Source of the DNA: Oikopleura dioica
Lineage: Eukaryota; Animalia; Chordata
DNA: 64,000 bases
Direction: 5' to 3'
NCBI GenBank assembly: GCA_907165135.1
Contig: OU015566.1
Location: 2,790,001-2,854,000, forward strand
Part shown: piece after piece, positions 9,434 through 42,337 of the stretch
How the letters are laid out: each line of letters opens with the position of its first letter
Position numbering within the stretch: position 1 is the stretch's first letter
Made by a program: the position numbers and the translations under genes
Notes under the pieces: model-generated
Seen by the model: the letters and a program-made list of their open reading frames with translations, nothing else
What the model was told of the DNA's origin: nothing
Databases searched by the model: none

Positions 9434-9595
9434 TTAAATCATCGCCGGTGAGCGTTAACATAATAAATTTTTAACGCCATAAGCGGCGGAGGAATAATAG
9501 TCGCTGCCATATTTTTATTGTACGCGGTTGACCGCAAATCAATAAAAAATTTTATCTTAGGCTAGATCTTAATCTTCGTTAGTATCTTCAGGATG

Positions 9596-12365: not shown

Positions 12366-12397
<32 letters not shown>

Positions 12398-24930: not shown

Positions 24931-25008
24931 CATTAACTTATGAATCATAAGTTATGATCGATTCGGAATCTGAAATGAGTTTTCATGAAAATATTTCTTG
25001 TTTTTTTA

Positions 25009-25301
25009 TAAGAAAAGAGAAAAAAGGTTAACTTAGGCGTAGTCGAAATTCTAGAGTATAACTTAGTTGTTTTGATTATGGTGGCCAGTTCCGAGCGTGA
25101 GTGTTGTTGAAATCAGGTGCGCGGGTCACGATATTTCTAGAACGCTCCTGAGGATGGGCCGCGCTAAAGCAAAAAGTGAAAAACACTTCATTCTGAATTT
25201 TCTCAGAGAGGCATCAACACCTCTCGGAAAATTTTCTCAAAAAGCGCTTGAAGCGGACCGGAATCCGAAAACAAGCAGCTAAGAAAGAGAATTTGAAAAT
25301 T
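25009..25301 (+). repeat. Split direct repeat A1 (293 bp)
   Basis: Identical by eye to 40003-40295. Confidence 0.97.
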
Positions 25302-25368
25302 TTTCCTCACGAATTGACGCTCTCTGGAAAACCCCTACTCAGTGTGACGTTTATTCCACACGAGGAAG

Positions 25369-26010
25369 ATGCTTACGGAGGTCAACCCTCGTCGGACGGA
25401 CGTAGCCCATTGGCTGAGACAGAAGGATAATCCGTGGGTTGGAATGTCCGTCTTTGATTTCTCAGTCACGGAGCTTTTCTCCAATCTCGTTGTCACTAAG
25501 GCTACGACTCCCGTTGGAGGTAGAGCATGTGAATGCTAATCCTCAGTAGTTAATTTTGGTTTTCAGAAGGCGTCGTCTTCCTGGAGGAACTACGGACAGA
25601 AACCTTCACGAACACTAAGCGACTGATGGACCAGTGCTTCTTGATTCGTATTTCAACTAAGGATGGAGGCAAGAACCTCTCCTTCTATCACGACGCGAAA
25701 GAGTGAGTTATTCCCACAAAATTACGTTTCCTAAGAATGATTTAGCATGACTGAGGTCCTGCTCACGGCGGATGCGCTTAATGCCTGGATAAACCCGGAA
25801 CTTATTGGCACCATCGGACGGTGGAAGCTTCCTCAGGAAAGGTTGAAGAAAATCCTTGTCGTAAAAGTTCTAAGAAAAACAATTCTAGAAACCCGAATTG
25901 AACATTCATCATTAAAACCACATATGTGTATAAACTCAGTAAATTCATTTGGAATCATCCGGGAAACATGTCAAAGCGCCTTTATGGTTTACAAAAACAA
26001 ACAATTCTAG
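25369..26010 (+). CDS. Element gene 1, unknown function, spliced; 3' end unresolved (25901 or 26010, or joined to the large ORF)
   Basis: ATG 25369. Introns 25520-25566 (47 nt) and 25703-25745 (43 nt) keep frame into ORF 25747-26010. Confidence 0.6.
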
Positions 26011-26310
26011 AAGGTCCATTATTGCGAATCACACATCCTGCCGGGAGAGATATTTAAACCCTTTCCTCAGGCCAGATAAAAGCTGAGGCGACCGGAAAAC
26101 CGGTGATTTAACCCAAAAGATGGGAAAATAATGATTCTAGAAGCCATCTATATTACAAACTACATATCTAAGTAAAGGATTTTCGGTTCTCTAACAAGAA
26201 CGCCCTCCCGAGAGATATATTCCTAAGGATTCACTAAAAACTTAGTGGACTTAAAATAAACAATTCTAGAATCGTACAAAATCGCCCAGAAGGATAATCC
26301 AATTGCTAAG

Positions 26311-29300
26311 TTGATACCGTCTTCAAACCTCTCTAAGTTGCCGAAGATTCGGGTGCCGATAACCCGAAATGATTCCTTAGCGAAGAACTGCAGCCTTCGA
26401 GCGTTCGCCAGTCTTTACAAAGAGGATGAAGCGGAAAATCCGAAATACTTAGAAATCTGCTACGACTCGCCGCGCGAGGACGACCTCAACATAAGTCTTT
26501 GGGAAGCCGAGAACTTGAATGCGATCACTAAGGCTCAACGGAAATGGTTCGAGCGAGACCCAGCGGGAAAACTGAGATCCCCGGCGCCGGCTGACCCAAA
26601 GAAGCTACTGGACACGAGCACTTCAGCCTTGATCCGCTGGTGGACCAAACTTCTGATGAAGAAAGATACTCAGGCAGGCCATCTCGACTTAGATATCTCC
26701 ACCTTGCTCACTGAGGAAGATTTGGACGACATCTTTCGGTGGACCGAAACCGTGGACCAAGCGGATTTCAATACCCAAAATTTAACTAAGTTCCTCGCGT
26801 CTCGATGGATAAAGCGAACCCGACCACACACCCGCAGAATCTGGTATGAGAAAGACTACGTGGAGAAACTAAAAGAAACAGGCGGAAACCTAAGAGAAAC
26901 TACGAATCCTGAGATAGTTGAAAAGCTATACAAGCTCGCTGACTGCATTCGAATTGACCCGGGTAACCAATTCTGGAGATTCACCGCGGCATGGCTGAGA
27001 CAAGTTTACCAACTAAGTTACAGCTGGCACAAAAGCATGCAGCAGAACACTGAGGAAATCCCGGAGACTCTTTTCTTCTTCGAGAACGGCGCAGATTTGA
27101 CCAGACGCAAGAAGGAGAAAGATGAATACCTGAGCCCGATTCCCTCCGTCATTGAAGAAACGTCTTCGACCCCGACGGCCTGGTTGCTTATTGACACAGC
27201 CCCGCTGCAACTGGTTTTGATCAACTTAGAATACGATAAGGAAAGAATCACTCAGGAAATGTGGATCTGGCAGAAGCTGGCCAAGACGATGGGCGTCAAG
27301 AAAGAAGTCCAAGAGTCGATTCGACGATGGATAGCCACAACTCAGAGACAGGGCTTTCGCCAAGCTGCGGATGATTGGAAAAACTTAGTGGAGAAAGTTA
27401 ACGATCGTAACTGCGAAGGAAACCTGAGGGTGTTAATCGAACCATGGGCAAATTCGACCGACGAACAAATGTTGAAGAACATCCGACAGACTCTGATTTA
27501 CTTAGCAAACGACGACATCATGGTCACCAGAGCCCGACTTAGAAAAATCCTAGGAAAGCAGAGGGTTTCAAACGAAGTTATCAACTTTGAAGATATTGAA
27601 ACGGTCGAGGCTGACTCCCTCCCATACGATTTTACGACTCAGATTCTCAACGGCGGCCCAGTCAGAGTCTTCCAAACTTCCTCAGAACACAGACCGGGCA
27701 TCTGCAGAGTCATCGGCTGTTCTCGACGCAGCGGAAACTTTCAGTGCTGCAACAAGTGCGGACAAGCCCTCCCGATGATTTTCGACAACCTGAGAGACTC
27801 AAGAATGGTCGTCGACCTATCCCAACCCACTGAGAAGAAAGTAATTGCGCGGGAGCGATGGACGGAACCGAAAATCATGAACGACGTTCACCCACACACC
27901 CGAGCTGAAATCCACGCCGACATCATCGACATTCAATCCACTCAGAGGGAAATGGGTGGCGCCCGCGACAAAATTGCGGCGATTCTGGCTGAGAAATATC
28001 TGTCAGGAGTTCAACGAGACTGGGGCCACTCGTATTACCGCAATAATGAAAATCTACTGAGAAATATGAGGGACTTCGCGGAAAACTTCCAAACCCTTAA
28101 GGAAAAAGCTCACTGGTGCTGCCTTCAAGAGCAAACGGAAGGCGTGGCGATCCTCTTTCCTCTACTCAGCATCAACGACGATGGCAAAAGAAAATACGCC
28201 GACCCTCTCTTAGTCCAGATAACTAAGGGATCTTACTCGAGAGGGATCCTGCTCCGCGAATTACCCGACAACACTGAGAAACTCTGGACTAAAACTAAGT
28301 TTAAACTGAGACACGTGGACGTCCTGGCCTTCATCGACCAAGTCTCCCAGCTCGCTGAAATGTACGACGCTGAAAACTACCTCCCTGAGTTCGAAGTAAT
28401 GCGCGACATTATCACTAAGCAAAAGGGAATCGACATCGCCATCCTGACCGAAACACACAGGGAATTCGAAAAACTCTCAAATCTCCTGCTACGAGAATTG
28501 GTCGACGACGTGGAAAACAGGGGGGCCAGAACCCAGTACCCACAAATCTTAGGACACGGCTCAGTATATGGTTTCTCAGTAATTGACCGTTTTGATGGCC
28601 GATCGAAACAAACCAAAACTTTCCTCAGACCAGTCCAAAAAGGCGCTCATCTTGGAATGCCGAAATCCGTGGACAAACACGAATCTCAGTCACTCCTGAA
28701 CTTCCTGAGCAACTTAGCAGTCGCAAGAAACACCGTCAACGGTTGTCATCCTGAGAACTTGATGGGCATCACAACCTGGAGCGTTTTGGGATCTTCTCAG
28801 GGAGCGGAATGGGCACGACAAGAAGAGGTGGTTGCCTTCATGGCATTGATCATCGATCATGCAGACCGTGCCATCCTGAGATTTTGGAAAATTGAAGAAG
28901 CTGAGTTGATCTACAAGGATGGAGTTTTCAAACCAACTGAGGAAACTCCTGAAATTACTAAGAAGAAGATGGCAACTTCTCAGGCGCCACGCGAATTACA
29001 AGCTCAGCGGGAAGAAACCCTCTGGAATAAACTGAGAAGTCACACGTTGTGGCCCCGCCGTTTCTTAGAATCGATCCGACAGTACCTTCAGCCAGACGGC
29101 CGAGTGGGAAAGCGCCTGTTGAAGCAGATTCTTCATGACTTTAATCGCTTCTATCTTACAGGATACATGGGCCAGAAGAGAGCCCTCATCCCGATAATGG
29201 AACGATACTTTCAACTCAGAGATGATGCGAGGAACACGAGAAATCGCCCACGGGATCCGACGAACAGACCTTTCCCTTCTAAGACTTGGCACAAACGCCA

Positions 29301-30576
29301 ACGAACGACCCGCAAAAAGCTCGACAAATTCGGTTTCCCGGAACCGGGCGATGACTCAGATTGCTCAGATTATAGCTCAGGCGAAAACGACCCCGAACCA
29401 AATTACGATACGGGACTTACATATGTAGCCGACTCAGCATCGGAACTATCCGACACTAGCTCAGACTCAGACTCGAACTCAGAGGATGGAGAAAGAAGCC
29501 TTCGCGTGGAAGAATCCTTGTCGAATGAAGAAATTCCCCCAGCCTTGGTGAGACTGGAGGATGCAGGATCACCGAACTTACCTCAGCTGGAAGATGTTCC
29601 CGAGCCACCACCGGCCTCAATGAGGGAAGAAATCGAAAAACTTAGTCAGAAAACTCAGAAGAATCACCCAGAGCCCGAACAACCTGGCGGTTTCAACAAA
29701 GAAAGATACTTCGAGATGCTGAAAGAAGAAAGGCACGCAAGAGTGCTAGCTGGCGAACTTTCTCACCTTTATTTATCTAAGGAAACAGAGGATAAAGCTA
29801 AGCAAGAAGCGAGGGATTTCTTCGCACGAAAAGCCCAGGAGTACGCGAAAAGAAATGTGGCAGCGGGGATGAGCTCAGAAAGCTCTTCTTCATCGTCCTC
29901 AAACAGCGAAAGTCCTGAAGAAGATGAGATTGTCATGGTCCCAAGACTGGAAGACGACTCCGGCTCGTCTTCGGATTCCTCAGTGGCAACAGTCATCGAT
30001 CAAACTGAGTTTAGAAGGCGACAAGAAGCGATCCAGAAGATCTCCGACGTCCAGCGAATCGAAACGGATGATAGACAACGGGAAAATTTAACTAAGAAAA
30101 TCCTTTCGCGAGAACTGCTTGGCGAAACTAAGAAAGAAGATGGACTTTCGGGGTCACGAAAGAACGCCGGAGCAGCCGGAAAACTTGCAACTGAGAAAGA
30201 GTTAGAGGAAATCACTGAGGACATGAGCAAACTGAGCGTCAGCAAGAGCGAGAACTCGGGAAACGACTCGAAACCGACACCTAGAAATCAAAATCTGCTC
30301 TTCGATGAAGCTAGACAGCTGAGACAAGGTACGGGTGGAGAGAGACCCGAGAGAAGATTCAGATTCGCCGATAACTCATCAAGGGAGCGACAACTAAGCG
30401 AAGTTCGTGTGATTCAGCGATTGAACTACCGACGAATGTTCGACTCAGCGGAACTGAACCAAAACGAGGGTCCGTCTTATTTGCCTGAGGAAGAAGACGG
30501 TTCACTTCCAGAAGGTAAAACGACACACATAAAAACTCCATTTAATACTAAGAAAGAATACTGGCTAAAAGATTGA
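26311..30576 (+). CDS. Element ORF, 1421 aa, unknown function; acidic/Ser-rich C-terminal third
   Basis: Uninterrupted ORF, open from 26260. First in-frame ATG is late (LLMKK), so the 5' end is probably spliced. Cys cluster CRVIGC...CCNKC. Confidence 0.85.
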   Translation: MIPSSNLSKLPKIRVPITRNDSLAKNCSLRAFASLYKEDEAENPKYLEICYDSPREDDLNISLWEAENLNAITKAQRKWFERDPAGKLRSPAPADPKKLLDTSTSALIRWWTKLLMKKDTQAGHLDLDISTLLTEEDLDDIFRWTETVDQADFNTQNLTKFLASRWIKRTRPHTRRIWYEKDYVEKLKETGGNLRETTNPEIVEKLYKLADCIRIDPGNQFWRFTAAWLRQVYQLSYSWHKSMQQNTEEIPETLFFFENGADLTRRKKEKDEYLSPIPSVIEETSSTPTAWLLIDTAPLQLVLINLEYDKERITQEMWIWQKLAKTMGVKKEVQESIRRWIATTQRQGFRQAADDWKNLVEKVNDRNCEGNLRVLIEPWANSTDEQMLKNIRQTLIYLANDDIMVTRARLRKILGKQRVSNEVINFEDIETVEADSLPYDFTTQILNGGPVRVFQTSSEHRPGICRVIGCSRRSGNFQCCNKCGQALPMIFDNLRDSRMVVDLSQPTEKKVIARERWTEPKIMNDVHPHTRAEIHADIIDIQSTQREMGGARDKIAAILAEKYLSGVQRDWGHSYYRNNENLLRNMRDFAENFQTLKEKAHWCCLQEQTEGVAILFPLLSINDDGKRKYADPLLVQITKGSYSRGILLRELPDNTEKLWTKTKFKLRHVDVLAFIDQVSQLAEMYDAENYLPEFEVMRDIITKQKGIDIAILTETHREFEKLSNLLLRELVDDVENRGARTQYPQILGHGSVYGFSVIDRFDGRSKQTKTFLRPVQKGAHLGMPKSVDKHESQSLLNFLSNLAVARNTVNGCHPENLMGITTWSVLGSSQGAEWARQEEVVAFMALIIDHADRAILRFWKIEEAELIYKDGVFKPTEETPEITKKKMATSQAPRELQAQREETLWNKLRSHTLWPRRFLESIRQYLQPDGRVGKRLLKQILHDFNRFYLTGYMGQKRALIPIMERYFQLRDDARNTRNRPRDPTNRPFPSKTWHKRQRTTRKKLDKFGFPEPGDDSDCSDYSSGENDPEPNYDTGLTYVADSASELSDTSSDSDSNSEDGERSLRVEESLSNEEIPPALVRLEDAGSPNLPQLEDVPEPPPASMREEIEKLSQKTQKNHPEPEQPGGFNKERYFEMLKEERHARVLAGELSHLYLSKETEDKAKQEARDFFARKAQEYAKRNVAAGMSSESSSSSSSNSESPEEDEIVMVPRLEDDSGSSSDSSVATVIDQTEFRRRQEAIQKISDVQRIETDDRQRENLTKKILSRELLGETKKEDGLSGSRKNAGAAGKLATEKELEEITEDMSKLSVSKSENSGNDSKPTPRNQNLLFDEARQLRQGTGGERPERRFRFADNSSRERQLSEVRVIQRLNYRRMFDSAELNQNEGPSYLPEEEDGSLPEGKTTHIKTPFNTKKEYWLKD

Positions 30577-30640
30577 TTAAAGGCAGCTTTTTCGGACCAG
30601 GATATAAAATTTCATTTGAAATAGTTCCGCTAAGCATTTC

Positions 30641-31250
30641 ATGAACCGGTATTTCCAGCTACTAAATTTAACTAAAATATGGTGTTGACTTTGTTAACAA
30701 AATTATCCTTACTAACTTAGAATTATAGTTCCAGCCGGCATTTACGGTCAGAGCTCGAGATTTACACGCCGGGGACCTACTGGCGAGTCCGAGCGAGAAA
30801 TCCTACGACTAAGACAGATCGGAATCACCAGGGAAGCCCAAGCAGTCGAAACAGCCGCCTCCACGTGGTCCGAAACTCAGGTCAAGAGGATTGAAATGGC
30901 CGCTTATACGGTCACGACCCTTTACAACTCAGTCACAGATGATGTGCTCTTACAGGTAGCTCAGTAATTCAAGTTTCTCGGGAAATTAATGAAATCTCAG
31001 GCACAAGACGACTTGGCACGTTTTGCCTTAGAAGACGGCGCTCAACTCACACGCTTACTTCACCAACTAAGTTTAACTCGAAGAGACGCCTTTTTCAACC
31101 CGTCAGTTTTGCGGCTCTCTATTTACCACGCGCTCAGACGAATGCAGAAACTGGTAAGAACTGAAACTCGGACCCAGAACTAAGTAAGTGGTTCAGGGAC
31201 AGGTTAAAACATGGTGGAAGGACTTCATCCCGAAGAGCCGAGAAGATTGA
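30641..31250 (+). CDS. Element gene 3 (~150 aa), unknown function, spliced; first exon tentative
   Basis: Exons 30721-30955, 31001-31153 and 31197-31250 joined by 45- and 43-nt GT-AG introns in phase 0. Confidence 0.6.
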
Positions 31251-31547
31251 AAACCGAAAAAACCAATAACTTAGAACAGTAAAATTTTCCTTTCTACTGA
31301 GAAAACTTCAAACTTAGTCTGTATCCATTTATCAATACACTTATCTCATTGACAAGCAAAAACGCTACGCCGAGAATTCACAACTTCCGTGGTCAGATTA
31401 CAGCCGAGAAGCCCGGTGAAATGGGAGACCCCAAAGTACTCGGTGCTTCGGAGCGGAATGAAGGAGTCGGTGACTCTGAGGCCTCGGTGGTTATGAATTC
31501 TTGGAGGGCAATTTTTGTTATATATACTCAGGTTCAAAGGCTTCAGA

Positions 31548-32736
31548 ATGAGCAAAACTCGCAAGCATAACTCGATTCCCCCAACTCAAACTGAGCAAGA
31601 TCAAGAGCCTCAACTTGGAACAAGCGGCTCAGTGCAGGAAAAACTCAGTGATAGCGGAGAATGTACGATCAAGGTGTTGCAAGAACAAGTCATCACTTTG
31701 CAGGCGCAAGTCAAGCTTGTCGACTCGGTGGTCAAAAATCAAGCACACCTGGAGAATTCCGTGGATACCTTAGCAAACCAACTTCACTTAGCACACCAGC
31801 ACAACGACACGGTGGTCCCGACAGACTACACACGCGATTTAACTGAGATTGAAAAAGAAACCGGCCGTTTCTCGAAACCGATCGAAATTTCGGTTCAACA
31901 GGCTTATAGAGTCGAAGCAACTTACACTCAGATGCTGGCCCTAACACTGGGAAGAGAAGCTAAATGTCTCTACGCGGCAACACGTTTCTCCCTGTACGAT
32001 CTTTTTCCCAATCTTACCTCAGAACAGACAATGGTAAAGAAAGTCCCACTCGACGCCAGCATCTATAAAGAATTTGCCGACGTCAATGCACTACTTAGAG
32101 AACTCATGGACGAACGCAAGGAGAAACGAACGTGGTCTTTAAATCTGAGAGATGGCCTTTTTATCGTAGCACGGTGAGTACTCAAAGACCTTAAAACTTC
32201 ACTTTAAGATTCCCGTCAAAAATTTTCCGTACTAAATAACGTAGACTCCCTAGAATGTATTTCTTGTAAATCTTCGTTATATAAATCTTGAACGTTCTTT
32301 AGTAGTTGAAACGAATACAAACTTAGTGATTCCTCGACAAACTGAGTTATTTAGAAACACCTACCAAGCCTTCTTCGTCGATCTTCTCCGGGCAGTCACG
32401 GCCCCAAACATCTTCGAGCTGTCCCTGGGAACTTTATCTCACTTAGTCAGAACATCGAAGGATGGCCTACAACGTTTATTCGGACGACACAATAACACCG
32501 TCTACAGAATGGACGACTGGCTGAGAATGTCTGAGAGCCCTACTTTTACCAGACAGAACGCACTACAAGAACTAAGAAACCTCTTCCCACTCAAGTCGGA
32601 GACATCGAAGATGGTTTTCACAGCACTGGCCTTGGATAAAGCAGATGAGGCTCTCGCAGCCGGCATCGATGATTGGCATGCCACGTCCTCGAAATACGAC
32701 TTAGAAGAAGAAGGAGAAATCCCGACGACTACTTAA
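31548..32736 (+). CDS. Element gene 4, coiled-coil N-terminal half, possible Gag/ORF1-like; join between 31548-32173 and 32326-32736 unresolved
   Basis: cttcag|aATG start. Heptad-like VLQEQVITLQAQVKLV. GTGAGT donor at 32174. Confidence 0.55.
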
Positions 32737-32936
32737 AACTCAGACTCAGAGGAAGAGGCCGGAAACATCTACGAAAATTTCGTCAGGAAAGCCAAAAGAG
32801 CCCGACTATAAAGAAGGAATAATTTTACTTAGATCATAAATAACTACTGAGATAAAAACAACTGAGAGTTGAATTATGTAATCTGCCTTTACAATTAAAT
32901 ATATCCAATAAGGAAATTCCACGTCCACATTTCAGA

Positions 32937-35345
32937 ATGACAGATAATTATAACTTTCATGAGGCGCGCGCGAAAACGTTGGAATTAATAAAAGAAGGAA
33001 AATTCGATTATCGCAACTCAGATGAAATTGCAGCATGCAAGCTCGATCAACTGGAACGAGACAAGAATACACCGATTTGGAACACTCAGGACTGGATAGC
33101 TTATGGATTAAGATGCTTAGATAACTTAGAAAAATACGATAACGGGAACCTTGTACTCGACTGGGAGTTAATAAGGTTTAGAGCAGAGTCAGAATTCCAA
33201 GCAGGTTCGTTTTCTAAAATGTCCCCAATTTGGTTTTTAATCTCGAACAGACTTAGGCCCCAAGACCGCGGCGAAATTTATCACACCATTCATAAAGGAG
33301 TAAACCTGTTCGATAATTTAACTAAGATATCGGAGAAAAAACCAATAATTTATAAGAACAAATCATTTTTTACTAAGAAAATTACTAACCCAGACAATGC
33401 CTCGATTTGCCACAAGGAGGAAGTGGTCTGGGCAGAAAAGTACCCATACCCGCGAGAGGTGTGGACCCCAGTCTTCAGAAATGATAAGGGAAACATTGAG
33501 AACTTAAGTTTTAGAAACCCAAAGTCCATCACCAAGTACCACTCCGTTATTACTAAGCAATTAATTAAATGGTCCAACTCGGGGAGTATTGAGTGGGTTC
33601 CCTGGCATCACGTTCAAAGACCCTTAATGATCGGAAATATAGTTATCGCCCCAAAAGCAGGACCTGAGCTCTATCGAATGTGCTATAACGGGGGCCCCAT
33701 AAAGTTCTGTGAAGAGCACAAACAACCCTGCCACTTAGATACAGCCGCAATGGCTCTGGATCACCTAGAAAAAGGGGACTTGCTGACCAAAGTGGACGAC
33801 AAGTCGGGTTTCCACCAACTTTTCTTAGATAAATTTAGCCGAGAAATGGCATATTGCTCGTACGGGGGAGAACTCTTTCGTTACTCAGCGGCCGCGTTCG
33901 GTCTCCCTAAGATTCCCGGAGTCTACCAAATGATAAACAACGTGGCAATTAATTTTCTGAGAGAAAGGGGCCACCAGGCCTTCTTATACTTAGATGACAG
34001 ACTTTTTATCACAAGACCAAAAACTAAGACAGAAGCGGAAGACCTTCTCAAAGGGAAAAAGGTCCCCGAGGGACCTTTCTTAGGAATGATGATAATGACG
34101 GCCTTGGGAACTTATATTAATCGACCAAAGAGCGAGCTGGTTCCCACCAGAAGAATAGAATTTTTAGGTTTTATAATGGACACCGATAAATGCACGGTTG
34201 AGATCCCACCGGGAAAGTGGGAGAAGTTTTCTGAAGAATCTAAGGAAATCTTGAAGAAATCCAAAGTCTTATTTAAGGACTTGGAAAAGCTAAGGGGGAA
34301 GATGGCGTCTTTCGCGTTGGTCGCCTTAAATATGAGACTCTACATAAGACGGATAACTGAGGCTCTGGTTAGATCGGAAGGAGAGGATTACGTTAAAATG
34401 ACTCAGGATATTAAGGATGAAATTAATGAATGGCTCAGCTCGAAATACGTAGCCAAAAGTAGATCTTGGCTCAAGCCGGGTATTGTCAAAGCCAGGATAA
34501 CTGAGGTACATACAGACGCAAGCAATTATGCGGCTGGAGTCACCATCGAATCGGAAAACTTAGATATTAATGTCCCCTATACGGAAGGTGATGCGATAAG
34601 CAGAGACCCCATACACCTAAAAGAGGCATACGCCGTTTTGTACACACTCAGAAATTTCGGGAAAAAGTTTCGAAACCGCAGACTTAGCTTTAAAAACGAC
34701 AACATGGCTGTCGTCAGAACTTTCGAGCACGGCTGCTCGAATCCGGCCCTGAATAGACTAATCCGCAAGATCCATGAAACGGCGGCGGACAATAATATTT
34801 CCTTAGAAATAGAATGGGTTCCTACAAAAGAACAAAAAGCGGACGCGGCCTCGAGAATGATCGACTCACGTGAAGCTATCTTTCGCACTTCAGCTTTCAC
34901 TGAGATTGAGAGAACTCTCAAAATAAAATTTACCTTAGACGCAATGGCCAGCCCGAACAACAAGAAATGCAAAAACTTCATCTCTTGGAGAGAGGAGGAT
35001 AACACGTGGGCCTCAGATTTTTTCTCAGTTAAGGACTTCGGGGATCACAACATCTGGGTTTTCCCGCCCAAGAAATGCACAGAAAAGGCCTTTTTCTGGC
35101 TTAAGGAACGGGCGAGACGAAACACATGGGCGCTGGTTATCTTAGAGTATGAAGCGGTTTCTTCAATCTGGCCAGTGGCCACCGGCCCGGAATTTAGCAC
35201 ACTTAGAAATATTAAGAATAATCCTGTTCTCTTCCCTTCGAAAAAGTGGTCTGATAGCTTTAAGGGATATTGGAAAATTCCAAGCAAAACCACCTGTTCA
35301 ATCTTAGTGCATTATCCAACAAGAAAACGAGCTCTCCAAATTTAG
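32937..35345 (+). CDS. Pol: reverse transcriptase + RNase H + DIRS-type Dam-like methyltransferase domain (802 aa)
   Basis: RT: KVDDKSGFHQ, FGLPKIP, YLDD, IEFLGF. RNase H: VHTDASNY, HLKEAYAV, DNMAVV, KADAASR. MT: LDAMASPNNKKC, DFFS, WVFPP. Confidence 0.95.
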   Translation: MTDNYNFHEARAKTLELIKEGKFDYRNSDEIAACKLDQLERDKNTPIWNTQDWIAYGLRCLDNLEKYDNGNLVLDWELIRFRAESEFQAGSFSKMSPIWFLISNRLRPQDRGEIYHTIHKGVNLFDNLTKISEKKPIIYKNKSFFTKKITNPDNASICHKEEVVWAEKYPYPREVWTPVFRNDKGNIENLSFRNPKSITKYHSVITKQLIKWSNSGSIEWVPWHHVQRPLMIGNIVIAPKAGPELYRMCYNGGPIKFCEEHKQPCHLDTAAMALDHLEKGDLLTKVDDKSGFHQLFLDKFSREMAYCSYGGELFRYSAAAFGLPKIPGVYQMINNVAINFLRERGHQAFLYLDDRLFITRPKTKTEAEDLLKGKKVPEGPFLGMMIMTALGTYINRPKSELVPTRRIEFLGFIMDTDKCTVEIPPGKWEKFSEESKEILKKSKVLFKDLEKLRGKMASFALVALNMRLYIRRITEALVRSEGEDYVKMTQDIKDEINEWLSSKYVAKSRSWLKPGIVKARITEVHTDASNYAAGVTIESENLDINVPYTEGDAISRDPIHLKEAYAVLYTLRNFGKKFRNRRLSFKNDNMAVVRTFEHGCSNPALNRLIRKIHETAADNNISLEIEWVPTKEQKADAASRMIDSREAIFRTSAFTEIERTLKIKFTLDAMASPNNKKCKNFISWREEDNTWASDFFSVKDFGDHNIWVFPPKKCTEKAFFWLKERARRNTWALVILEYEAVSSIWPVATGPEFSTLRNIKNNPVLFPSKKWSDSFKGYWKIPSKTTCSILVHYPTRKRALQI

Positions 35346-35346
35346 A

Positions 35347-35790
35347 ATGGCCCCCTGGTTCGTTGCCTCAGTAAGAGCGGGAGACTACGCCTACAAAAAG
35401 CACGATGCAAGAGTTAACCTCTTCAACGGATACCAGTACCAGCTAGAGCAGATTCGGACTTCGAAGTTTTATAGCGGCTACAAAACTAAGTTAACAAGGA
35501 AACAGTGGGCCGACACGAGACCATCCTTGGAGGAATTACTGAGCGCAACATCGAAAGTCTTTCCTCTCTTCCGAACCACCTCCATGTCGTCGATCGAGAG
35601 ATGTATCTTGCTATCAACTCAGGACAACTTGAAATATGAATTCCTACACAACATCGGAGAAACACTGAGAGAAACTCTCGAAATGGAAGAAAAATACGTA
35701 AAATTACAAACTAAGATGACAACGCACATTCACTTAGACTGCTATACTTTCGCCCAAGAGGCAAACCTCTCAGCACCTGTCCTCGACTAA
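35347..35790 (+). CDS. Element ORF, 147 aa, unknown function
   Basis: Starts 1 nt after the pol stop (TAG-A-ATG). Confidence 0.7.
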   Translation: MAPWFVASVRAGDYAYKKHDARVNLFNGYQYQLEQIRTSKFYSGYKTKLTRKQWADTRPSLEELLSATSKVFPLFRTTSMSSIERCILLSTQDNLKYEFLHNIGETLRETLEMEEKYVKLQTKMTTHIHLDCYTFAQEANLSAPVLD

Positions 35791-35857
35791 GAAATTTCTT
35801 TTCTTGTTAACGGAAACAAATTTCATTTTAACCAAACTTTTATTTAACGAATTTAGA

Positions 35858-37521
35858 ATGGCCTTATTTACGACAAACCTAAATAAACCGTTATTATGGG
35901 ACTCAATGATCAAGGGTGAAACTAAGTCGAACATCCAGAGATTCATCGAACCAGTGGCAATTGATGAAAAACAATTCCGTGAAATCCACGAAGAAAACAT
36001 GAAGAACTCAGACTTCAAGCTTTACTACTCAGACATGAAAGAGACTAAGGAAAGATGGGAGCAGGCAAGACGTGAGTCTTCACAAGCCTTGGAAACACTG
36101 AAGGAATGGAAGAAGAAACTGGAATGTTTCCCTCTTCTAAAGAAGTCCAAAGAATCCGGATCGCTACTCAAGGGTAAAGACAAAGACATCTACGAACTAA
36201 GGGAAGAAGGATTGGCGGATAAAATCGAGGAAGCTAAGAAATTGGACGACGCCAAGAATAAAGAAAAAACTAAGCTAAGAGAGCAGTGGGTCCACGCTGA
36301 TCGCCTCTGGAAAGAATTTTCCCTGACAATGCTGGGCCAGCCCTTCGCCTACGAAAGCGACGGTAAATTCTTCAGAATCGGAGGAGGAACAATCTCACTA
36401 CGACAAAAACCTAAGAAAAATCTGGACGAAATGGGAACTGAGTTTCGGGAATTCTTGATGGATAAGAAGAGCGTTACAACGATGAGCTTTGCAAAAATAA
36501 CTGAGATTCTTTACAAGTAAGATACCAACCATAAAACTTAGAAGAATTCTCCCCATTTAGAATTTCAGTAGATAAACCCAGGCGATACCCTGATGTAATG
36601 AATCTTGTTGGACATTTATGCATGATTACTGCTAAACGCTAACCCTAGATACGAGAAAGCCTGCGAACCTGGAACCCACGATCGCGGACAAGTAGGAGAG
36701 GTACTCAACTTCGTCCGAGAAAATCCGACCTGCTCAAGACAAGATTTCTTAGATGAGGCAATGAAGATTGCAGATGCGGACTTCAAGGTCGAGCTTCAAC
36801 GACACATAAAATCACTAAGAAAAAACAAAGAATATGAAAACGATCTGAACAATTCAATCGACCCCACAACTGAGAGAGATGAAATACTGAAACAAGGACG
36901 CGCAGACTTCCAGGTCGCCAAAATGATGCAACGGAAGCTGGCACCCGTTCGGGAACATTTAACTGAGGAAGAAAGATCGAGGTAATCACGAACAATTATG
37001 CGGAACTTAACGCAATTCTTGAAATTAGAATATCAATCTTAGCACGACTTAAAATTATGTACCAGCTCAGAAAAAAGAAACATTACGGTTTCCATAACTT
37101 AGGATTTAGATATGGCCTCCAGTTCAGCAGGAGAGGGAGCCGCCCTGACAACCGACGAAACAACTTCCAAGAGCAGCGTCGACGACATGGAAACTCAGAT
37201 CGACGTGACAACGGCTTTAGAACTGAGCGAAGAGAACGATACTCAGGGCGGGACTCAGGAAGAGATCGCCGGGAGGGCTTCGATTACCGACGACGGGATC
37301 AACGCCCTTTCAATGACAACAGGCGGTTTCACAATGGCAACGGCAACCACAACAACTCAGGATACAACAACCGACGTGGTTGGGGCAGCAACAACAGAAA
37401 CAACTCAGGCAACTACAATGGCGGCAGAGGTTACCACGGAAGAAACCGCGACAACTCAGGTTACAACGAAAATCAACGACGAGGAAATGCTCAGCCTTCT
37501 GAACAAAAGATGGAACAGTAG
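35858..37521 (+). CDS. Element gene 7: helical charged protein with predicted Arg/Gly/Asn-rich RNA-binding tail (Gag/nucleocapsid-like), spliced
   Basis: atttag|aATG at 35858. ORF segments 35858-36520, ~36650-36981 and 37110-37521. Intron 36982-37109 is phase-compatible; the middle join is unresolved. Confidence 0.55.
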
Positions 37522-37676
37522 ATGATATGAAGAATATGACAACTGAGAGAACTTAGAATTACTTAGAAAAACCTTCCTTATGCTCAGTAATTGGAAAAGT
37601 CTGCACTTATCTTCAATATATCCCACGTATACCTCATATAACGCCACAGGATCTAAAAATTCTCCCGAAACTTAGA

Positions 37677-38770
37677 ATGAAAGACCGAGACTGGGCAGTG
37701 AACGAATGGGTCCGCGTGGGCCTGAAAAAGAATACCAACTCAGAACGATTGGACGACGAGAAGATGCAGGAGTTAGTAGGAAACTTAGAAATAGATAACC
37801 CGGGTAAACCCTACGGATGGACATTAATCCAATCTCAACTAATTTATGCACTAGAAGAGTCCCTAAGATATCAACTAACAAATGGTGCAATTCAGACGTT
37901 AAGATCCTACATAACTAAGAGAACCCGGGAGCAAGCGAAAGGAGAACTGTATGAGCCAAATCCGCCTCCCTTCTTTGGATGGGAGGACATGAAAAAGTAT
38001 GGAATACGATGTGGTACCCTCACCCAAAGAAAAACTTAGAAACTCGGCACAAGGTGGTGCTCGTGAGCTACATTTGCTACGTTACTGGAGCCAGAACTAA
38101 TGAAATTTGCAACATCAAGATCCAAGACTTAGAGGAACATCAAGAGGACGATCACACTTTCCTCAGAATGCCAATTAGGGTAAGCAAGAGTAACAGTAAA
38201 AAGACAAGGAGAGAAAGTGTGATCCTTATTTCTAAGCCAACGGATATTATCCCAGTCATGGAACGATTAAAACTCAGCATCGGGAAACGAAAGAAAGGCC
38301 CGGTCTTTCAAGAAATGAATACAGCTAAGGTCACTTATTTTTTGAAAAAGACAGCGAAAACCTTGGGCTGGAAGATCGCGCCACGGGCCCACGGAATGCG
38401 GTTGGGATACGTTCTCAACTCTTCGATCGGAGGAATCGCGGACGACGAGATCATCAACTCCTGCCGTTGGAGAGACGACCAAATGCTGAGATATTACAGA
38501 AATCACCACTTAGAAGCGACGAAGCATGGATCGGCCTTCAAAATATACCAACAAAACGAGAAACTGAGACTGGGAGACATCGAGGCTAAGAAAGCTTGGT
38601 GCGAAAGATCGACACAAACACCGGATTGGGAACCCCCTAAGATGGTCCAAACTAAACTGAGAACAATCAAGAAAATGGCGGATGGACAGACTCAGACGGA
38701 AGAAATTACATCCGAAAATCAGGAGGAAACTTCTATCTTCGAAAAATTTCTGAGAGACTCTCGACACTAA
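37677..38770 (+). CDS. Tyrosine recombinase, split by a -1 frameshift at the A5 run 37992-37996
   Basis: TGARTNEI (R), HGMR (HxxR), CRW and MLRYY (W, Y). Adding one A gives a continuous 364-aa ...WEDMKKVWNTMW... Confidence 0.9.
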
Positions 38771-38819
38771 ACTTAGAATTTAACAAGATTACCGAAGTTG
38801 ACAAAGACCGATCTTCAGA

Positions 38820-39864
38820 ATGCTATCCGTGAACATGCTCCGAAAAGGGCAACGACTCAACACTTGTGGATCACTCAGGTGTATCTGGTCTCCAGTCACA
38901 CCGGCCGATGCCTGTGATGCCCCAGAAGAGAGGAAGGACCAGCTCAACTTACAAGTCTCCATGGCCTGTCAGTCTGCCAGTTACTGGTATGCAAACAACT
39001 TAGTGAAAATGGTGAGAGATGGCGAAAACAAGGAAGAAGAGTTCAAGAACCACCTTGACACTTTAACTGAGAAACACCACTACGACTGGCACGAGGTGAA
39101 GTCTTTCTATCACAACGTAAAGAACCACTCAAACATAAACGCTGTGCTGGAGAAATGGGAAAGGTAGATCACCTACACGTGATTTATCGGGATACAAAAA
39201 ATTTTTTAGTTTAAAACAACTGAGTATCATCAAGATCGCCAGAAGGGACAAGAACGTCGACGAGAAGCTGGAGAAGATGGAGAGACGAATCGGCATCCAC
39301 TTAGCGCAGGAGGAATGCGGACTGGCAGACCTTGACCTTGGAACCGACTCGAAAGGGACAATCCAGAAAACTCTGCATAAAATCTGCGAAGAAGCATTCC
39401 TTAGTGACATACAGGTGAAGAAGCTTTGGCACTTAGCTTGTAGGGAACCGGGCCTCTCAAACAAGAAGACAAACATCTACGTGACGGGCGAAGCAACAAA
39501 CCTATACAGCTTAGAAGAGGAAATCGCCACTCATGCCCGTTGGGACAGGCTCGACAAGAAGTTCACGCTCGTCTATCTTTACGTGGATTCAGACGAGGCC
39601 CCCCTACTGGTGATGTATAATGGAGAAAATCCGACAATTCTAGACTCAACTCAGGATGACTGGACATTCAAAACTAAGACTTCCTGGACACGTAACGATA
39701 GAAAAATCAGCGAAATCCTTCAAGACTCAGAAAGCAAACCTCTACTCAGATATAACGACTCCACTCAGGCTGTTATCTTGTCACTCACAGGGGAACAGTT
39801 CAAGACTACGGCAGGAAGAAAACGACGAAACTCAGCATCACGACCTTTGACAGATCAAAACTAA
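38820..39864 (+). CDS. Element gene 9 (~332 aa), unknown function, one intron
   Basis: cttcag|aATG start. The 46-nt intron 39164-39209 (GTAGAT...TTTTAG) joins ORFs 38820-39167 and 39277-39864 in frame. AATAAA at 39908. Confidence 0.7.
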
Positions 39865-39961
39865 GGAATGTTATCTTGTATGTCTCCTCATGTATCAAAT
39901 TCACGGGAATAAACTTCATAAACGCCACACTGAGATGGGGTTCCAAATATGGAGAGGGAAC

Positions 39962-40005
39962 GTATTTGGTCTCCATTAGTTGTTATTTATTGATCTTTAC
40001 TGTAA
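39962..40005 (+). repeat. Split direct repeat B1 (44 bp), overlapping A2 by TAA
   Basis: gtatttggtctccattagttgttatttattgatctttactgtaa, identical to 42294-42337. Confidence 0.95.
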
Positions 40006-40295
40006 GAAAAGAGAAAAAAGGTTAACTTAGGCGTAGTCGAAATTCTAGAGTATAACTTAGTTGTTTTGATTATGGTGGCCAGTTCCGAGCGTGAGTGTTG
40101 TTGAAATCAGGTGCGCGGGTCACGATATTTCTAGAACGCTCCTGAGGATGGGCCGCGCTAAAGCAAAAAGTGAAAAACACTTCATTCTGAATTTTCTCAG
40201 AGAGGCATCAACACCTCTCGGAAAATTTTCTCAAAAAGCGCTTGAAGCGGACCGGAATCCGAAAACAAGCAGCTAAGAAAGAGAATTTGAAAATT
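40003..40295 (+). repeat. Split direct repeat A2 (293 bp)
   Basis: Identical to A1 at an offset of 14,994 bp. Confidence 0.97.
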
Positions 40296-42293
40296 CTCTA
40301 CCCACCCTTGCAAAAATTTCTCAGAACGAATTTAAAAACCATATAGATAACTGAGGAATAGGCGGTTAATAATTTTAACCTAAGATTGATTTCCGGGAAA
40401 CTTATTCGTAGAGTCACCACCATAACTTAGCTATAAGAACTTAGACACCGAAGAATACAACAATGAGAACGAGGGAGAAGGTAAACTGGAGATAGTGGGG
40501 AAACCATATCAATTACTAAGGAAGAAGTCGCTTATATTTTAACTAGGACGTGGATATTCGAGAAAACTCCTATAATTTTGGTAATAATTCGTACTTTTGG
40601 CAGAGCATTTCTAGCGTAAGGATCGATCACCATAACAAAGCCAAGAAAACTGAGATACTTGTATTTATCATTACGGGAAACAAACGATAAACTAAGATAA
40701 AGAATTGCACTAGTTTCTGTAAACTGATTGGTTAAACATACTAGAAAGATCTACGGACGGAAGAGATCCGAAGGATGCTAATTAAACTAAGCTACTTCTT
40801 CACTTTGTCTAGAACGCCAAATCTTAGAGTATAAGATATCGATTGAGACACGGGGAAAGAAATCCAAAAGTTTAGAAACCGAATGAGACTTAAGGTTTCC
40901 TCTGCTACTGGCTTCTCGCAGGGATCCAGCCTGAAAGCAGCTTTGGCCAATCTGAGTTCGAACACGGAGCTGGGATCAAGACTTAGTTTAGCGGCTTTCG
41001 TTGGATAGTCTCCTAGATGAAATTAAAAATGCCATAAAAACTCTCTCGGGCGACCGAGATAACAATCCTTTTGATATACAACAAATGACTTAGTAACTTA
41101 ACTATAATTCTTAGGATTATTAATCATCTTACTGAGTGTTAAGCTAGAAAACAACACGTGAAACGATATCAAGCTCGGTTCAACTACCTATACAATGGGC
41201 CATAATTTTTAGAACCATTTCTAAGTTTATTCAATTCCCAATCAGACCGGACATAGCAAAGTTAGGTAAAATAATCACCACGGTTAGAAATCTGTACGAT
41301 GATAATTTCGCTCTCTAGAAAGGGTATCAGGGGACCATAAAACATCTCAGATGGAATAAAACGGAAACTCAGGAAGAGCCGCGGGACGCGATTCAGGATT
41401 ATGATTTATCTTTAAAATGCGTACACTCGAAAACATCATGGCAAGTCCAGACAAACTTAGGGCATTAAAGAATGCGCTCAAGATTAAATCTCAAAAATGA
41501 TTATGAACCTAAGACAAGAATCGAATAACATAACCCTCAGATGAACTGATGACGGTGATTTCGACGAGTACATACCCCCGGCGTCTTTCGAGATAAAATG
41601 CTTAGCTACCATAATATTAATTATTCCGAGTGACTGAGACTCTCGAACAAATGACGGATACTTGAAGATCCTTTCTTAGGCCAGTAATTTAACTCTTCCT
41701 AAATGCTATCGAACTGAGACAATAAAACTAAATGTCCCGAGACACACCATTCATTCGAACGACCTTAAACCTTATCGTAGGATCACATGAGAAGTTACAT
41801 TTATCCTGAGTAGTTAAGGATGGGAACCAAGAGGCAAATTACCTTGCGAATTAGACAATTGAGTCGGATCATCGGCTAAAGCGAAAAATCTAAGGAAGAC
41901 TCTAAAAAAGGAACTTTAAGGTGCTCACACCCGTCGGGAATTCCTGAAACCCTCTAGAGAATCTCTTTCGGGAAGAACCAATCGATGCCATGACGGGCTT
42001 AGACTGAGTGAGGAGGCCCTTAAAACTGAGAGTTCGTGCAAATTAGTTACAAACAAGTTTTTCGTCACCACTAAAGAGTATTCTGAAACTTAGGAACACC
42101 TGAGATTAAGGCTCAAAAAGCACCGTTGTCGATAAAAAACCGTAATAACCCTTAAATAATGGTCACTAAGTAGTTTGTATCGAGACTTAATCTCCTTGGA
42201 TATAAGGAGTGATGAAAGATGTCTTGTGGACCTCAAGGATCATAACGGTAATAAGAATTTTTGCCCACCCTAGTTTACAGTAAGGATCGGTAA

Positions 42294-42337
42294 GTATTTG
42301 GTCTCCATTAGTTGTTATTTATTGATCTTTACTGTAA
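42294..42337 (+). repeat. Split direct repeat B2 (right terminus)
   Basis: Identical to B1. AT-rich host sequence resumes after TAA. Confidence 0.95.

What the first reader, a model, noticed from the sequence alone, without database searches (positions are those of the whole stretch)
25009..42337. Giant multigene tyrosine-recombinase retrotransposon (17.3 kb, about 9 genes)
Seen: an A1...B1A2...B2 repeat layout, an RT-RNaseH-MT ORF, a YR ORF and about seven further same-strand genes. Known: DIRS/PAT/Ngaro elements usually have about three ORFs (gag, pol, YR) and are roughly 5-7 kb. Inference: this is a much larger, virus-like lineage with several accessory genes of unknown function. Identical repeats and long open ORFs suggest recent activity.
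Basis: partly seen in the sequence, partly recalled or inferred. Interest (0 to 1): 0.95.

Follow-up and report, generated by a model that had tools for sequence, protein, structure and literature searches.

The report
Seven-gene tyrosine-recombinase retrotransposon in Oikopleura
A real 17.3-kb jumping gene in the tunicate Oikopleura dioica copies itself through RNA and inserts with a tyrosine recombinase, and it belongs to a marine-plankton lineage about three times larger than its known relatives, with five extra conserved genes of unknown function.

Summary
Window 25009-42337 has split direct repeats: A1 = A2 at 290/290 nt and B1 = B2 at 44/44 nt, with TAA shared at the joints. It encodes an RT-RNaseH-methyltransferase Pol and a tyrosine recombinase with all catalytic residues.

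The window is Oikopleura dioica (Okinawa) chr1. A 15.6-kb element in the Norwegian O. dioica assembly has the same repeat layout and matches every ORF in the same order (29-64% aa identity). Marine-metagenome contigs keep the same plan. The accessory genes are therefore integral, not host genes or an unrelated insertion.

Several adjoining ORFs are exons joined by annotated short introns, two of which the Norwegian relative shares.

New points:
- Six genes start with T[CT]AGA-ATG, a splice-acceptor-like signal. It occurs seven times on the window's + strand, all inside the element (0.68 expected by chance in the element).
- The 1421-aa ORF1 family has 11 hits among 1.84 billion representatives and no known fold.
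- No product has a membrane segment and nothing matched a capsid, so "virus-like" is unsupported.
- The recombinase gene has one single-base frame change.
- A 1,955-bp ORF-less stretch near the 3' end may be a nested insertion.

Best filed as a new, expanded variant of PAT-type DIRS elements.

The parts
25009..42337 (+). Whole element, 17,329 bp (OU015566.1 about 2,815,009-2,832,337)
   Evidence: Bounded by A1 and B2, with TAA shared between the left flank/A1 joint, the B1/A2 joint and the B2/right flank joint. Genome position derived from L014.
25012..25301 (+). Repeat A1 (290 nt)
   Evidence: 290/290 identical to A2.
25369..25860 (+). 5' leader exons of annotated gene g701: three small exons and two introns of 47 and 46 nt
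   Evidence: Exon map of P0053, P0040 and P0054. Homologous exons lie in the same order in L013, separated by short GT..AG stretches.
26311..30576 (+). ORF1, 1421-aa open frame. Orphan protein with a disordered acidic/Ser-rich C-terminal third
   Evidence: 100% match to O. dioica model P0040. 33-36% identity to P0041-P0043, and 36% by tblastn to L013, which encodes P0042. Weak but collinear match to the L001 and L008 first ORFs. Only 11 hits in 1.84e9 representatives. No Pfam or PDB hit.
27703..27759 (+). Conserved Cys motif in ORF1 (C-x4-C-x9-C, followed by x2-C in the window's own sequence)
   Evidence: C465, C470 and C480 are identical in all aligned relatives; C483 is read from the window sequence. 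A zinc-binding role is inferred, not shown.
28063..28815 (+). ORF1 core domain (residues 585-835), confidently modelled alpha/beta fold
   Evidence: AF2 pLDDT 80.5, pTM 0.82. Best Foldseek PDB match has E 9.6e-3 and TM <= 0.2.
31548..32736 (+). Positional gag candidate
   Evidence: A single 354-aa ORF in L013, 51-55% identical. Intron taken from model P0053. The second half matches the N-terminus of the L012 pol region.
32937..35345 (+). Pol, 802 aa, open. Not annotated in the public record
33510..34208 (+). Reverse transcriptase domain (YLDD present)
   Evidence: Profile versus PDB: caulimovirus and Ty3 RT, E 4e-26 to 3e-19. Y351, D353 and D354 invariant.
34500..34766 (+). RNase H domain
   Evidence: RT_RNaseH hits in 8 of 22 relatives. 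D527, E563 and D588 invariant.
34893..35171 (+). Dam-like methyltransferase domain
   Evidence: PF05869 at E 1.3e-5, 25.4 bits, below the 28.1-bit cut-off. 6 of 22 relatives hit.
35347..35790 (+). Gene 4, 147 aa, open. Starts 1 nt after the pol stop
   Evidence: 50% identical to L013. Equivalent ORFs follow pol in L001 and L008. Annotated as a 147-aa gene.
35858..37521 (+). Gene 5: coiled-coil part plus Arg/Gly/Asn-rich tail. One annotated intron of about 132 nt, and one further unmodelled discontinuity before the tail
   Evidence: A single 461-aa ORF in L013 and 454 aa in L001. Annotated 331-aa model. An HMM of the first part hits ORFs after pol in L002, L004 and L012.
37677..38770 (+). Tyrosine recombinase gene (N-terminal domain plus catalytic domain). 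Broken once by a single-base frame change
   Evidence: One continuous ORF in L001. One frame in L013, with one in-frame stop there. Only a 151-aa C-terminal piece is annotated.
38033..38506 (+). YR catalytic domain
   Evidence: PF00589 at 2.5e-7. R39, K70, H138, R141, W164 and Y173 invariant.
38820..39864 (+). Annotated product of 327 aa
   Evidence: P0052 = g706.t1. A single 337-aa ORF in L013, 29-34% identical.
39962..40005 (+). Repeat B1, abutting A2
   Evidence: 44/44 identical to B2. Conserved at 78-79% nt identity with the L013 B regions.
40006..40295 (+). Repeat A2
40309..42263 (.). 1,955-bp ORF-less segment flanked by the 8-nt direct repeat CCCACCCT. Possible nested insertion
   Evidence: Relatives have 95 nt (L013) and 125 nt (L012) between A2 and B2. 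Longest stop-free stretch is 76 aa, and there is no match in any fetched locus.
42294..42337 (+). Repeat B2
31543..38822 (+). Span holding the seven T[CT]AGA-ATG sites. Six are at gene starts (ATG at 31548, 32937, 35347, 35858, 37677, 38820) and one is in frame inside the YR gene (ATG at 38168)
   Evidence: These are all 7 + strand occurrences in the 64-kb window; 0.68 are expected in the element by shuffling. YAG-ATG is enriched at ORF starts across relatives, Fisher p = 3e-10.

Best explanation
This is one copy of a tyrosine-recombinase retrotransposon of the DIRS order with the PAT-type (split direct repeat) layout. It lies on chromosome 1 of Oikopleura dioica (Okinawa).

It belongs to a lineage, found in O. 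dioica and marine-plankton metagenomes, whose elements are 15-17 kb or longer. These carry seven same-strand genes: a huge orphan ORF1 with a short intron-bearing leader, gene 2, Pol (RT-RNaseH-MT), gene 4, gene 5 (coiled coil plus Arg-rich tail), the recombinase, and gene 7.

Inferred mechanism, by analogy with DIRS-1 (PMC7192593) and not shown here:
- A transcript starting in A1 is reverse-transcribed by Pol.
- The internal B1-A2 junction supplies the template that rebuilds a complete B-A joint.
- The recombinase inserts the product at a 1-3-nt microhomology (TAA here) without a target duplication.

My own proposal for expression is more tentative. The six genes after ORF1 each begin right after a T[CT]AG acceptor, so their mRNAs would be cut out of a long precursor. 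This could happen by spliced-leader trans-splicing, as in the host's operons, or by cis-splicing from a leader. Because conserved introns persist, the replicating template must be the unspliced RNA.
For: Anatomy and identical repeats.

Enzymes.

Host: ORF1 is 100% identical to model g701 of O. dioica OKI2018_I69 chr1, and the locus was recovered from OU015566.1.

Integral accessory genes:
- L013 (Norwegian assembly) has A1/B1A2/B2 and every ORF in order.
- L001 and L008 share ORF1, gene 2, pol, gene 4 and gene 5. L001, the longer contig, also has YR and an ORF in the gene-7 position.
- L012 is a second 14.7-kb O. dioica element with the same repeat plan.
- L002-L011 carry 15-22 kb of same-strand ORFs around pol and YR.

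Coding constraint: dN is 0.27-0.81 with dS saturated in 10 of 11 segments (the eleventh gave dN/dS 0.15). Near-identical metagenome copies give synonymous:nonsynonymous counts of 18:7, 13:8 and 8:2.

Conserved cis region: the B repeat is 78-79% identical to that of L013, while most non-coding DNA gives no match.

Gene-start signal.

Introns: annotation models, and leader introns shared with L013. The 46-47-nt lengths fit the host's median intron of 49 nt (PMC8008620).

Host operons and SL trans-splicing: PMC7986045, PMC11067885, PMC6883708.
Against: - No other copy of this exact family was seen. The nearest relative is 61% identical in Pol, so copy number and recent movement are unproven.
- The recombinase gene has one frame change. 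This copy may be defective, or the Nanopore-based assembly may hold an indel error.
- No transcript, SL-junction or cDNA data were available, so the expression model rests on sequence motifs alone. Some relatives have TTAAG instead of TYAG before the ATG.
- Tor elements of the same host can use internal promoters (PMC4402516), which would also explain separate gene expression.
- Placement among PAT, DIRS1 and Ngaro reference elements was not tested by phylogeny.
- The MT domain hit is below Pfam's cut-off.
Confidence: 0.85

Rival explanations
1. Composite locus: an ordinary 5-7-kb DIRS/PAT element that happens to lie next to host genes or an unrelated insertion (for example the ORF1 region), with the A repeat only appearing to enclose them.
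For: ORF1 and several other ORFs are annotated as ordinary host genes g701-g706 and carry spliceosomal introns. None has a known retroelement domain.
Against: The same genes occur in the same order inside the A/B repeats of L013, and beside pol and YR in L001 and L008. Strand composition is uniform. The ORF1 family was found only in O. dioica proteins and unnamed metagenome proteins; every member whose locus was fetched lies beside pol.
Confidence: 0.04
2. An immobilised, partly domesticated element. The copy no longer moves, and some of its genes (those annotated, with introns) now serve the host.
For: One frame change in the recombinase gene. Apparently single copy among annotated proteins. 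Introns that L013 lacks. Gene models built with RNA-seq hints, including three isoforms of g701 (PMC8008620).
Against: A and B repeats are identical (334/334 nt), which points to a young insertion. Pol is fully open with all catalytic residues. Several divergent families with the same plan exist in two O. dioica lineages and in metagenomes.
Confidence: 0.1
3. An endogenous copy of a true virus: a reverse-transcribing virus with a tyrosine recombinase, in which some orphan genes encode a capsid and other virion or host-interaction proteins.
For: Gene number and size exceed ordinary retrotransposons. Accessory gene sets vary between sub-lineages. Gene 5 has an Arg-rich nucleic-acid-binding-like tail. 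ORF1 has a conserved Cys motif. Near-identical contigs occur in several ocean samples.
Against: No predicted membrane segment in any product. No capsid, protease or envelope hit by Pfam (all ten window ORFs), nor by PDB sequence search and Foldseek PDB/BFVD for ORF1, the only product searched that way. The metagenome contigs can equally be host-genome fragments.
Confidence: 0.1
4. Assembly artefact: the A/B repeats were created by mis-joining of Nanopore reads.
For: The assembly is Nanopore-based (PMC8008620), and reads were not available to me.
Against: The same A1...B1A2...B2 layout, with a related B sequence, occurs in the separate Bergen (OdB3) assembly (L013), described as Sanger-sequenced in PMC8008620, and at another Okinawa locus (L012).
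Confidence: 0.02

Closest known systems
Pat1-like PAT elements, 'echinoderm form' (SpPat1 type), DIRS order
   Same: RT-RNaseH-MT Pol and a same-strand tyrosine recombinase. Split direct repeats A1...B1A2...B2, with the internal pair downstream of the recombinase. A Cys motif in the first protein (definitions from PMC4157794).
   Different: About three times longer. Seven genes instead of gag, pol and YR. Orphan 1421-aa first protein. Spliceosomal introns. An acceptor-ATG signal at each downstream gene. Phylogenetic placement not tested.
DIRS1-like elements (including those earlier reported from O. dioica by domain searches)
   Same: The same enzyme set (RT, RNaseH, MT, YR). PMC3266345 lists 4 O. 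dioica sequences in 2 families as DIRS1-like.
   Different: DIRS1-like elements have inverted terminal repeats plus an internal complementary region, three overlapping ORFs, and lengths of 3,974-6,283 bp (PMC3266345). Here there are no inverted repeats but split direct repeats and 14.7-17.3 kb.
Ngaro and VIPER elements
   Same: Tyrosine recombinase retrotransposons with split direct repeats and the internal pair after YR (PMC4157794).
   Different: They lack the methyltransferase domain. Here a Dam-like domain is present.
Tor (Ty3/gypsy) elements of Oikopleura dioica
   Same: Same host. Retroelements with an extra gene expressed through splicing or a separate transcript (PMC4402516).
   Different: Tor has LTRs, a DDE-type integrase (established knowledge of Ty3/gypsy elements, not tested here) and a membrane Env. 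This element has none of these.
Giant multi-ORF retroelements: Terminons (rotifers), Burro (planarians), Ogre (plants)
   Same: Retroelements well above the usual limit of about 10 kb, with extra ORFs of unknown function (PMC6431247).
   Different: Different RT classes and integration enzymes. That review lists no tyrosine-recombinase retrotransposon.

Membership tests
DIRS order (tyrosine-recombinase retrotransposons) | Reverse transcriptase with RNase H | tested here: met
   RVT_1 in 20 of 22 relatives. PDB profile hits to caulimovirus and Ty3 RT at 4e-26. YLDD and the RNase H acidic residues are invariant.
DIRS order (tyrosine-recombinase retrotransposons) | Tyrosine recombinase in place of a DDE integrase | tested here: met
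   PF00589 at 2.5e-7. R, K, H-x-x-R, W and Y invariant. No integrase or protease hit. The gene has one frame change in this copy.
DIRS order (tyrosine-recombinase retrotransposons) | Insertion without target-site duplication | tested here: met
   The flanks share only the TAA that also ends B. L013 and L012 show a 1-nt overlap. No empty site was available.
PAT superfamily (DIRS group with split direct repeats) | Methyltransferase domain after RNase H | tested here: met
   Dam PF05869 at E 1.3e-5, which is below the gathering score. 6 of 22 relatives hit, and conserved columns lie in that region. Support is moderate.
PAT superfamily (DIRS group with split direct repeats) | A1...B1A2...B2 split direct repeats | tested here: met
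   290/290 and 44/44 nt. Same layout in L013 and L012.
PAT superfamily (DIRS group with split direct repeats) | Zinc-finger motif in Gag (Pat1-like) | tested here: inconclusive
   A conserved C-x4-C-x9-C motif, followed by x2-C in the window's own sequence, lies in ORF1. ORF1 is not shown to be Gag, and the published pattern was not at hand.
PAT superfamily (DIRS group with split direct repeats) | RT and YR cluster with PAT reference elements in a tree | not tested
   No named DIRS, PAT or Ngaro reference sequences were returned by any search. Earlier domain-based work called O. dioica elements DIRS1-like (PMC3266345).
DIRS1-like superfamily | Inverted terminal repeats plus an internal complementary region | tested here: not met
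   0 inverted repeat pairs of at least 40 nt in 23-45 kb. The repeats are direct.
Ngaro / VIPER | Absence of the methyltransferase domain | tested here: not met
   A Dam-like domain is present.
LTR retrotransposon / endogenous retrovirus | Long terminal repeats, protease, DDE integrase, and Env for retroviruses | tested here: not met
   The A copies are not terminal on the right side. No protease or integrase hits. No membrane segment.
Host-type operon resolved by spliced-leader trans-splicing | Same-strand genes at short spacing with an AG acceptor before each downstream gene | tested here: met
   Spacings of 1, 49, 67, 155 and 200 nt between the six downstream genes. T[CT]AG lies 1 nt before six ATGs. 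Criteria taken from PMC7986045, PMC11067885 and PMC6883708.
Host-type operon resolved by spliced-leader trans-splicing | Spliced leader found on the mRNAs | not testable with these tools
   No transcript data were available.

The most novel reading that the evidence does not exclude
Pelagic tunicates harbour a clade of 'complex' tyrosine-recombinase retroelements. These have escaped the usual three-gene, 5-kb format by borrowing the host's operon and trans-splicing machinery to express many genes from one transcript. Their orphan proteins, including a 1,400-aa protein with an unmatched fold, would include structural parts of a particle. On this reading the clade is an unrecognised group of reverse-transcribing viruses that integrate by a tyrosine recombinase.
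Probability: 0.12. Interest if true: 0.9.

Novelty: new variant of a known kind. Interest (0 to 1): 0.66.

Why it matters
Tyrosine-recombinase retrotransposons are described as small (about 4-6 kb) with three ORFs, and the 2019 review of giant eukaryotic transposons lists none of them. This work documents a lineage three times larger. Its seven-gene plan is conserved across two O. dioica lineages and in contigs from ocean metagenomes.

It raises three concrete questions. What do five conserved orphan genes add to a retrotransposon life cycle? How does a eukaryotic retroelement express seven genes, given that the acceptor-ATG signal points to host-style polycistronic processing? How are introns kept in an element that copies itself through RNA?

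It also flags an annotation issue. In the public records, parts of the element are annotated as ordinary host genes (g701-g706), while pol is left unannotated.

Tried and rejected
- Single-sequence and profile searches of ORF1 against Pfam and PDB gave nothing.
- The AF2 model of ORF1 residues 1-1050 was poor (pLDDT 52). Its Foldseek searches against PDB and BFVD gave no match at E <= 0.001.
- The re-modelled core domain was confident but still had no fold match. The recurring weak hits (YaeQ; RNase H-like proteins such as PIWI and oligoribonuclease) have TM <= 0.2, so I do not rely on them.
- A weak Pfam hit to Ydc2 resolvase in an L004 ORF (E 0.043) was not pursued.
- Exact look-ups of the window's Pol and of P0040 found no record.
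- NG86 dS was saturated in 10 of 11 segments, so no dN/dS ratios are given for them.
- The AATAAA 44 nt after the gene 7 stop is not conserved in L013, so I dropped it as a signal.
- Rfam and tRNA scans of the window found nothing.
- The Thr-rich ORF at 37112-37525, annotated as a gene, looks like the alternate frame of the Arg-rich tail of gene 5.
- Volff et al. 2004 and Ganot et al. 2004 are not held in the library. I therefore could not check what was said about O. dioica DIRS structure or about acceptor-to-AUG spacing.
- I did not define any intron myself. Only introns in public gene models, or introns shared with L013, are used.
Full report
**1. Observation**

The repeat layout is exactly as described.
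- A1 (25012-25301) and A2 (40006-40295) are identical at all 290 positions.
- B1 (39962-40005) and B2 (42294-42337) are identical at 44 positions (49 nt with two mismatches).
- B1 abuts A2. The trinucleotide TAA is shared by the left flank/A1 joint, the B1/A2 joint and the B2/right-flank joint.
- There are no inverted repeats.

All long ORFs lie on the + strand. The coding strand has a uniform A-over-T skew (+0.16 to +0.31) and a GC content of 0.42-0.49 from 26 to 40 kb, against roughly 0.35-0.41 in the flanking DNA.

**2. Enzymes**

The 802-aa ORF at 32937-35345 is a Pol.
- RVT_1, RT_RNaseH and Dam hits are weak for the single sequence.
- Among 22 aligned relatives, 20 hit RVT_1, 8 hit RT_RNaseH and 6 hit Dam.
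- The family profile matches solved caulimovirus and Ty3 reverse transcriptases at E 4e-26 to 3e-19.
- YLDD and the RNase H acidic residues are invariant.

The recombinase ORF hits Phage_integrase at 2.5e-7. It keeps R, K, H-x-x-R, W and the tyrosine in all seven aligned relatives.

**3. Host**

ORF1 is 100% identical over the searched part to gene model g701 of Oikopleura dioica OKI2018_I69 chromosome 1. Fetching the neighbouring model g706 returned the same DNA from OU015566.1. This places the window at about 2,790,001-2,854,000.

The flanking genes are ordinary animal genes: oxoprolinase, a GT10 fucosyltransferase, an MFS transporter and a rhodopsin-type receptor.

**4. Are the extra genes part of the element?**

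Yes.

*Norwegian relative (L013).* A scaffold of the Norwegian O. dioica assembly holds an element of 15.6 kb.
- Its repeats are A1/A2 (288 nt, 100%) and B1/B2 (53 nt, 96%) in the same layout.
- Every window ORF has a match there in the same order. ORF1 is 36% identical, Pol 61%, the recombinase 64%, the two terminal ORFs 29-34%, and the other accessory ORFs 48-55%.

*Metagenome contigs.* L001 and L008 (Pol 46% identical) show the same order of ORF1, gene 2, pol, gene 4 and gene 5. L001 also has the recombinase and a last gene.

*More distant relatives.* Contigs from Tara Oceans and other ocean samples carry 15-22 kb of same-strand ORFs around pol and the recombinase. A second Okinawa locus (L012) is a decayed 14.7-kb element with the same repeat plan and a related B sequence.

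*Coding constraint.*
- Between the window and L013, synonymous sites are saturated in ten of eleven segments. dN is only 0.27-0.52 for Pol, the recombinase and genes 2, 4 and 5, and 0.68-0.81 for ORF1 and gene 7.
- Near-identical metagenome copies differ by more synonymous than non-synonymous changes: 18:7, 13:8 and 8:2.

*Conserved non-coding DNA.* Between the window and L013, the main conserved non-coding nucleotide stretch is the B repeat with the B-A joint (78-79%). This fits a cis-acting site.

**5. Gene plan**

L013 shows seven genes. The window's twelve ORFs collapse onto them.

The public, RNA-seq-hinted gene models give the following:
- They join the two halves of gene 2 through a 181-nt GT..AG intron.
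- They join the first two parts of gene 5 through about 132 nt.
- They join the two halves of gene 7 through 46 nt.
- They place two introns of 47 and 46 nt in a short leader upstream of ORF1.

The two leader introns are shared with L013. The other three are absent from L013, whose ORFs are continuous there. The lengths fit the host's median intron of 49 nt (PMC8008620).

Breaks that no intron explains:
- Window copy: one single-base frame change in the recombinase gene, and one unmodelled discontinuity before the Arg-rich tail of gene 5.
- L013: one frame change in ORF1 and one in-frame stop in the recombinase.
- L012: its pol is in several pieces.

Because the assembly is Nanopore-based, the single-base change may be an error.

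**6. A gene-start signal**

The octamer T[CT]AGA-ATG occurs seven times on the + strand of the whole 64-kb window, and all seven lie inside the element (0.68 expected there).
- Six mark the first ATG of gene 2, pol, gene 4, gene 5, the recombinase and gene 7.
- The seventh is in frame inside the recombinase gene.

L013 and the metagenome relatives have the same kind of TTYAG (sometimes TTAAG) just before their gene starts (Fisher p = 3e-10). Spacings between these genes are 1 to 200 nt.

O. dioica transcribes many genes as operons and resolves them by adding one spliced leader at AG acceptors (PMC7986045, PMC11067885, PMC6883708). I therefore propose that the downstream genes are expressed from a long precursor processed at these acceptors. 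Cis-splicing from a leader, or internal promoters as in some Tor elements (PMC4402516), remain open. This step is inference.

The persistence of shared introns implies that the copied template is unspliced RNA.

**7. The accessory proteins**

None has a Pfam family.

*ORF1.*
- The family has 11 hits among 1.84 billion representative proteins. The named ones are from O. dioica and the rest carry no name.
- It has a conserved Cys motif.
- Its 250-residue core models confidently (pLDDT 80.5, pTM 0.82), yet matches no solved structure (best E 9.6e-3, TM <= 0.2). The full-length ORF1 model matches no predicted viral structure.

*Gene 5.* It combines a coiled coil with an Arg/Gly/Asn-rich tail. It is the most widely kept accessory gene.

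*Gene 2.* It sits where gag is expected.

*Virus reading.* No product has a membrane segment, so there is no envelope candidate. The word 'virus-like' is not supported by anything I could test.

**8. The 3' end**

Between A2 and B2 the window has about 2 kb, where L013 has 95 nt and L012 has 125 nt. A 1,955-bp ORF-less stretch is flanked by the 8-nt direct repeat CCCACCCT, which L013 has once at the matching place. It has no match in any fetched locus. It may be a nested insertion, which would leave about 15.4 kb for the element proper. This is unresolved.

**9. Comparison with what is known**

- It is not DIRS1-like, which needs inverted repeats plus an internal complementary region.
- It is not Ngaro or VIPER, which have no MT.

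O. dioica DIRS-type elements were known from domain searches (PMC3266345, PMC5240408). I found no description of their size, gene content or termini in the papers held. The Okinawa genome paper does not mention DIRS and left 44% of repeats unclassified (PMC8008620). DIRS1-like elements measure 3,974-6,283 bp (PMC3266345). The review of giant eukaryotic transposons has no tyrosine-recombinase retrotransposon. The original 2004 paper on O. dioica retroelements is not held, so prior description cannot be fully excluded.

**10. Verdict**

I file it as a new, expanded variant of PAT-type DIRS retrotransposons, specific so far to O. dioica and marine-plankton metagenomes. What remains unknown is the function of five of its seven genes, its mode of expression, and whether this copy is still competent.

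Noticed in passing
window 32937-35345; L013 16308-18779: The intact pol gene is not annotated in either public O. dioica record. Other genes of the element are annotated as ordinary host genes (g701-g706; Norwegian models P0041 and P0042). One Norwegian model fuses the recombinase with gene 7.
   Followed up: partly
window 37112-37525: An annotated 137-aa Thr-rich gene overlaps the Arg-rich tail of gene 5 in another frame. L013 has a weakly similar overlapping ORF. It is probably a by-product of the low-complexity tail rather than a separate gene.
   Followed up: partly
window 38163-38170: A seventh T[CT]AGA-ATG lies in frame inside the recombinase catalytic region. It could give a 200-aa N-terminally shortened product, or it may be chance.
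   Followed up: no
window 40309-42263: A 1,955-bp ORF-less stretch flanked by the direct repeat CCCACCCT and short imperfect terminal inverted matches. It is absent from relatives and may be a nested non-autonomous transposon.
   Followed up: partly
window 12294-12646: A long trinucleotide repeat of about 350 nt, read as poly-Ser in one frame, inside an ORF that starts at 12102. A 75%-identical duplicated 440-nt segment lies at 10519-10961 and 12944-13386.
   Followed up: no
window 5513-5623, 6993-7153, 9591-9749; also 14427-14623 / 17717-17917: Short interspersed repeat copies (86-91% identical) in direct and inverted orientation. One 200-nt inverted pair brackets about 3 kb. They look like MITE-type elements.
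   Followed up: no
window 48146-48286 / 50531-50671: A 141-nt direct repeat, 93% identical, 2.4 kb apart.
   Followed up: no
window 54287-58491 (-), 44320-45949 (-), 2859-3777 (+), 61839-62456 (+): Host genes: 5-oxoprolinase with a 671-aa exon, an MFS transporter, a GT10 fucosyltransferase and a rhodopsin-type receptor. From motifs alone, the ORFs at 23989-24948 (-) next to the element's left end look like lipase class 3 exons, but Pfam gave no hit.
   Followed up: partly
L004/L005/L006/L007, L002/L003, L010/L011: Contigs of 12-24 kb from different ocean samples are 99.7-99.9% identical over their whole shared length. The same large relatives are therefore widespread in the sampled plankton. 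L004 carries five further ORFs after the recombinase, one of them 600 aa.
   Followed up: partly
L012 14718-14777: The second O. dioica element has a 12-nt tandem repeat encoding an Arg-Gly run between pol and the recombinase. This is the same position as the Arg-rich tail of gene 5 in the window.
   Followed up: no
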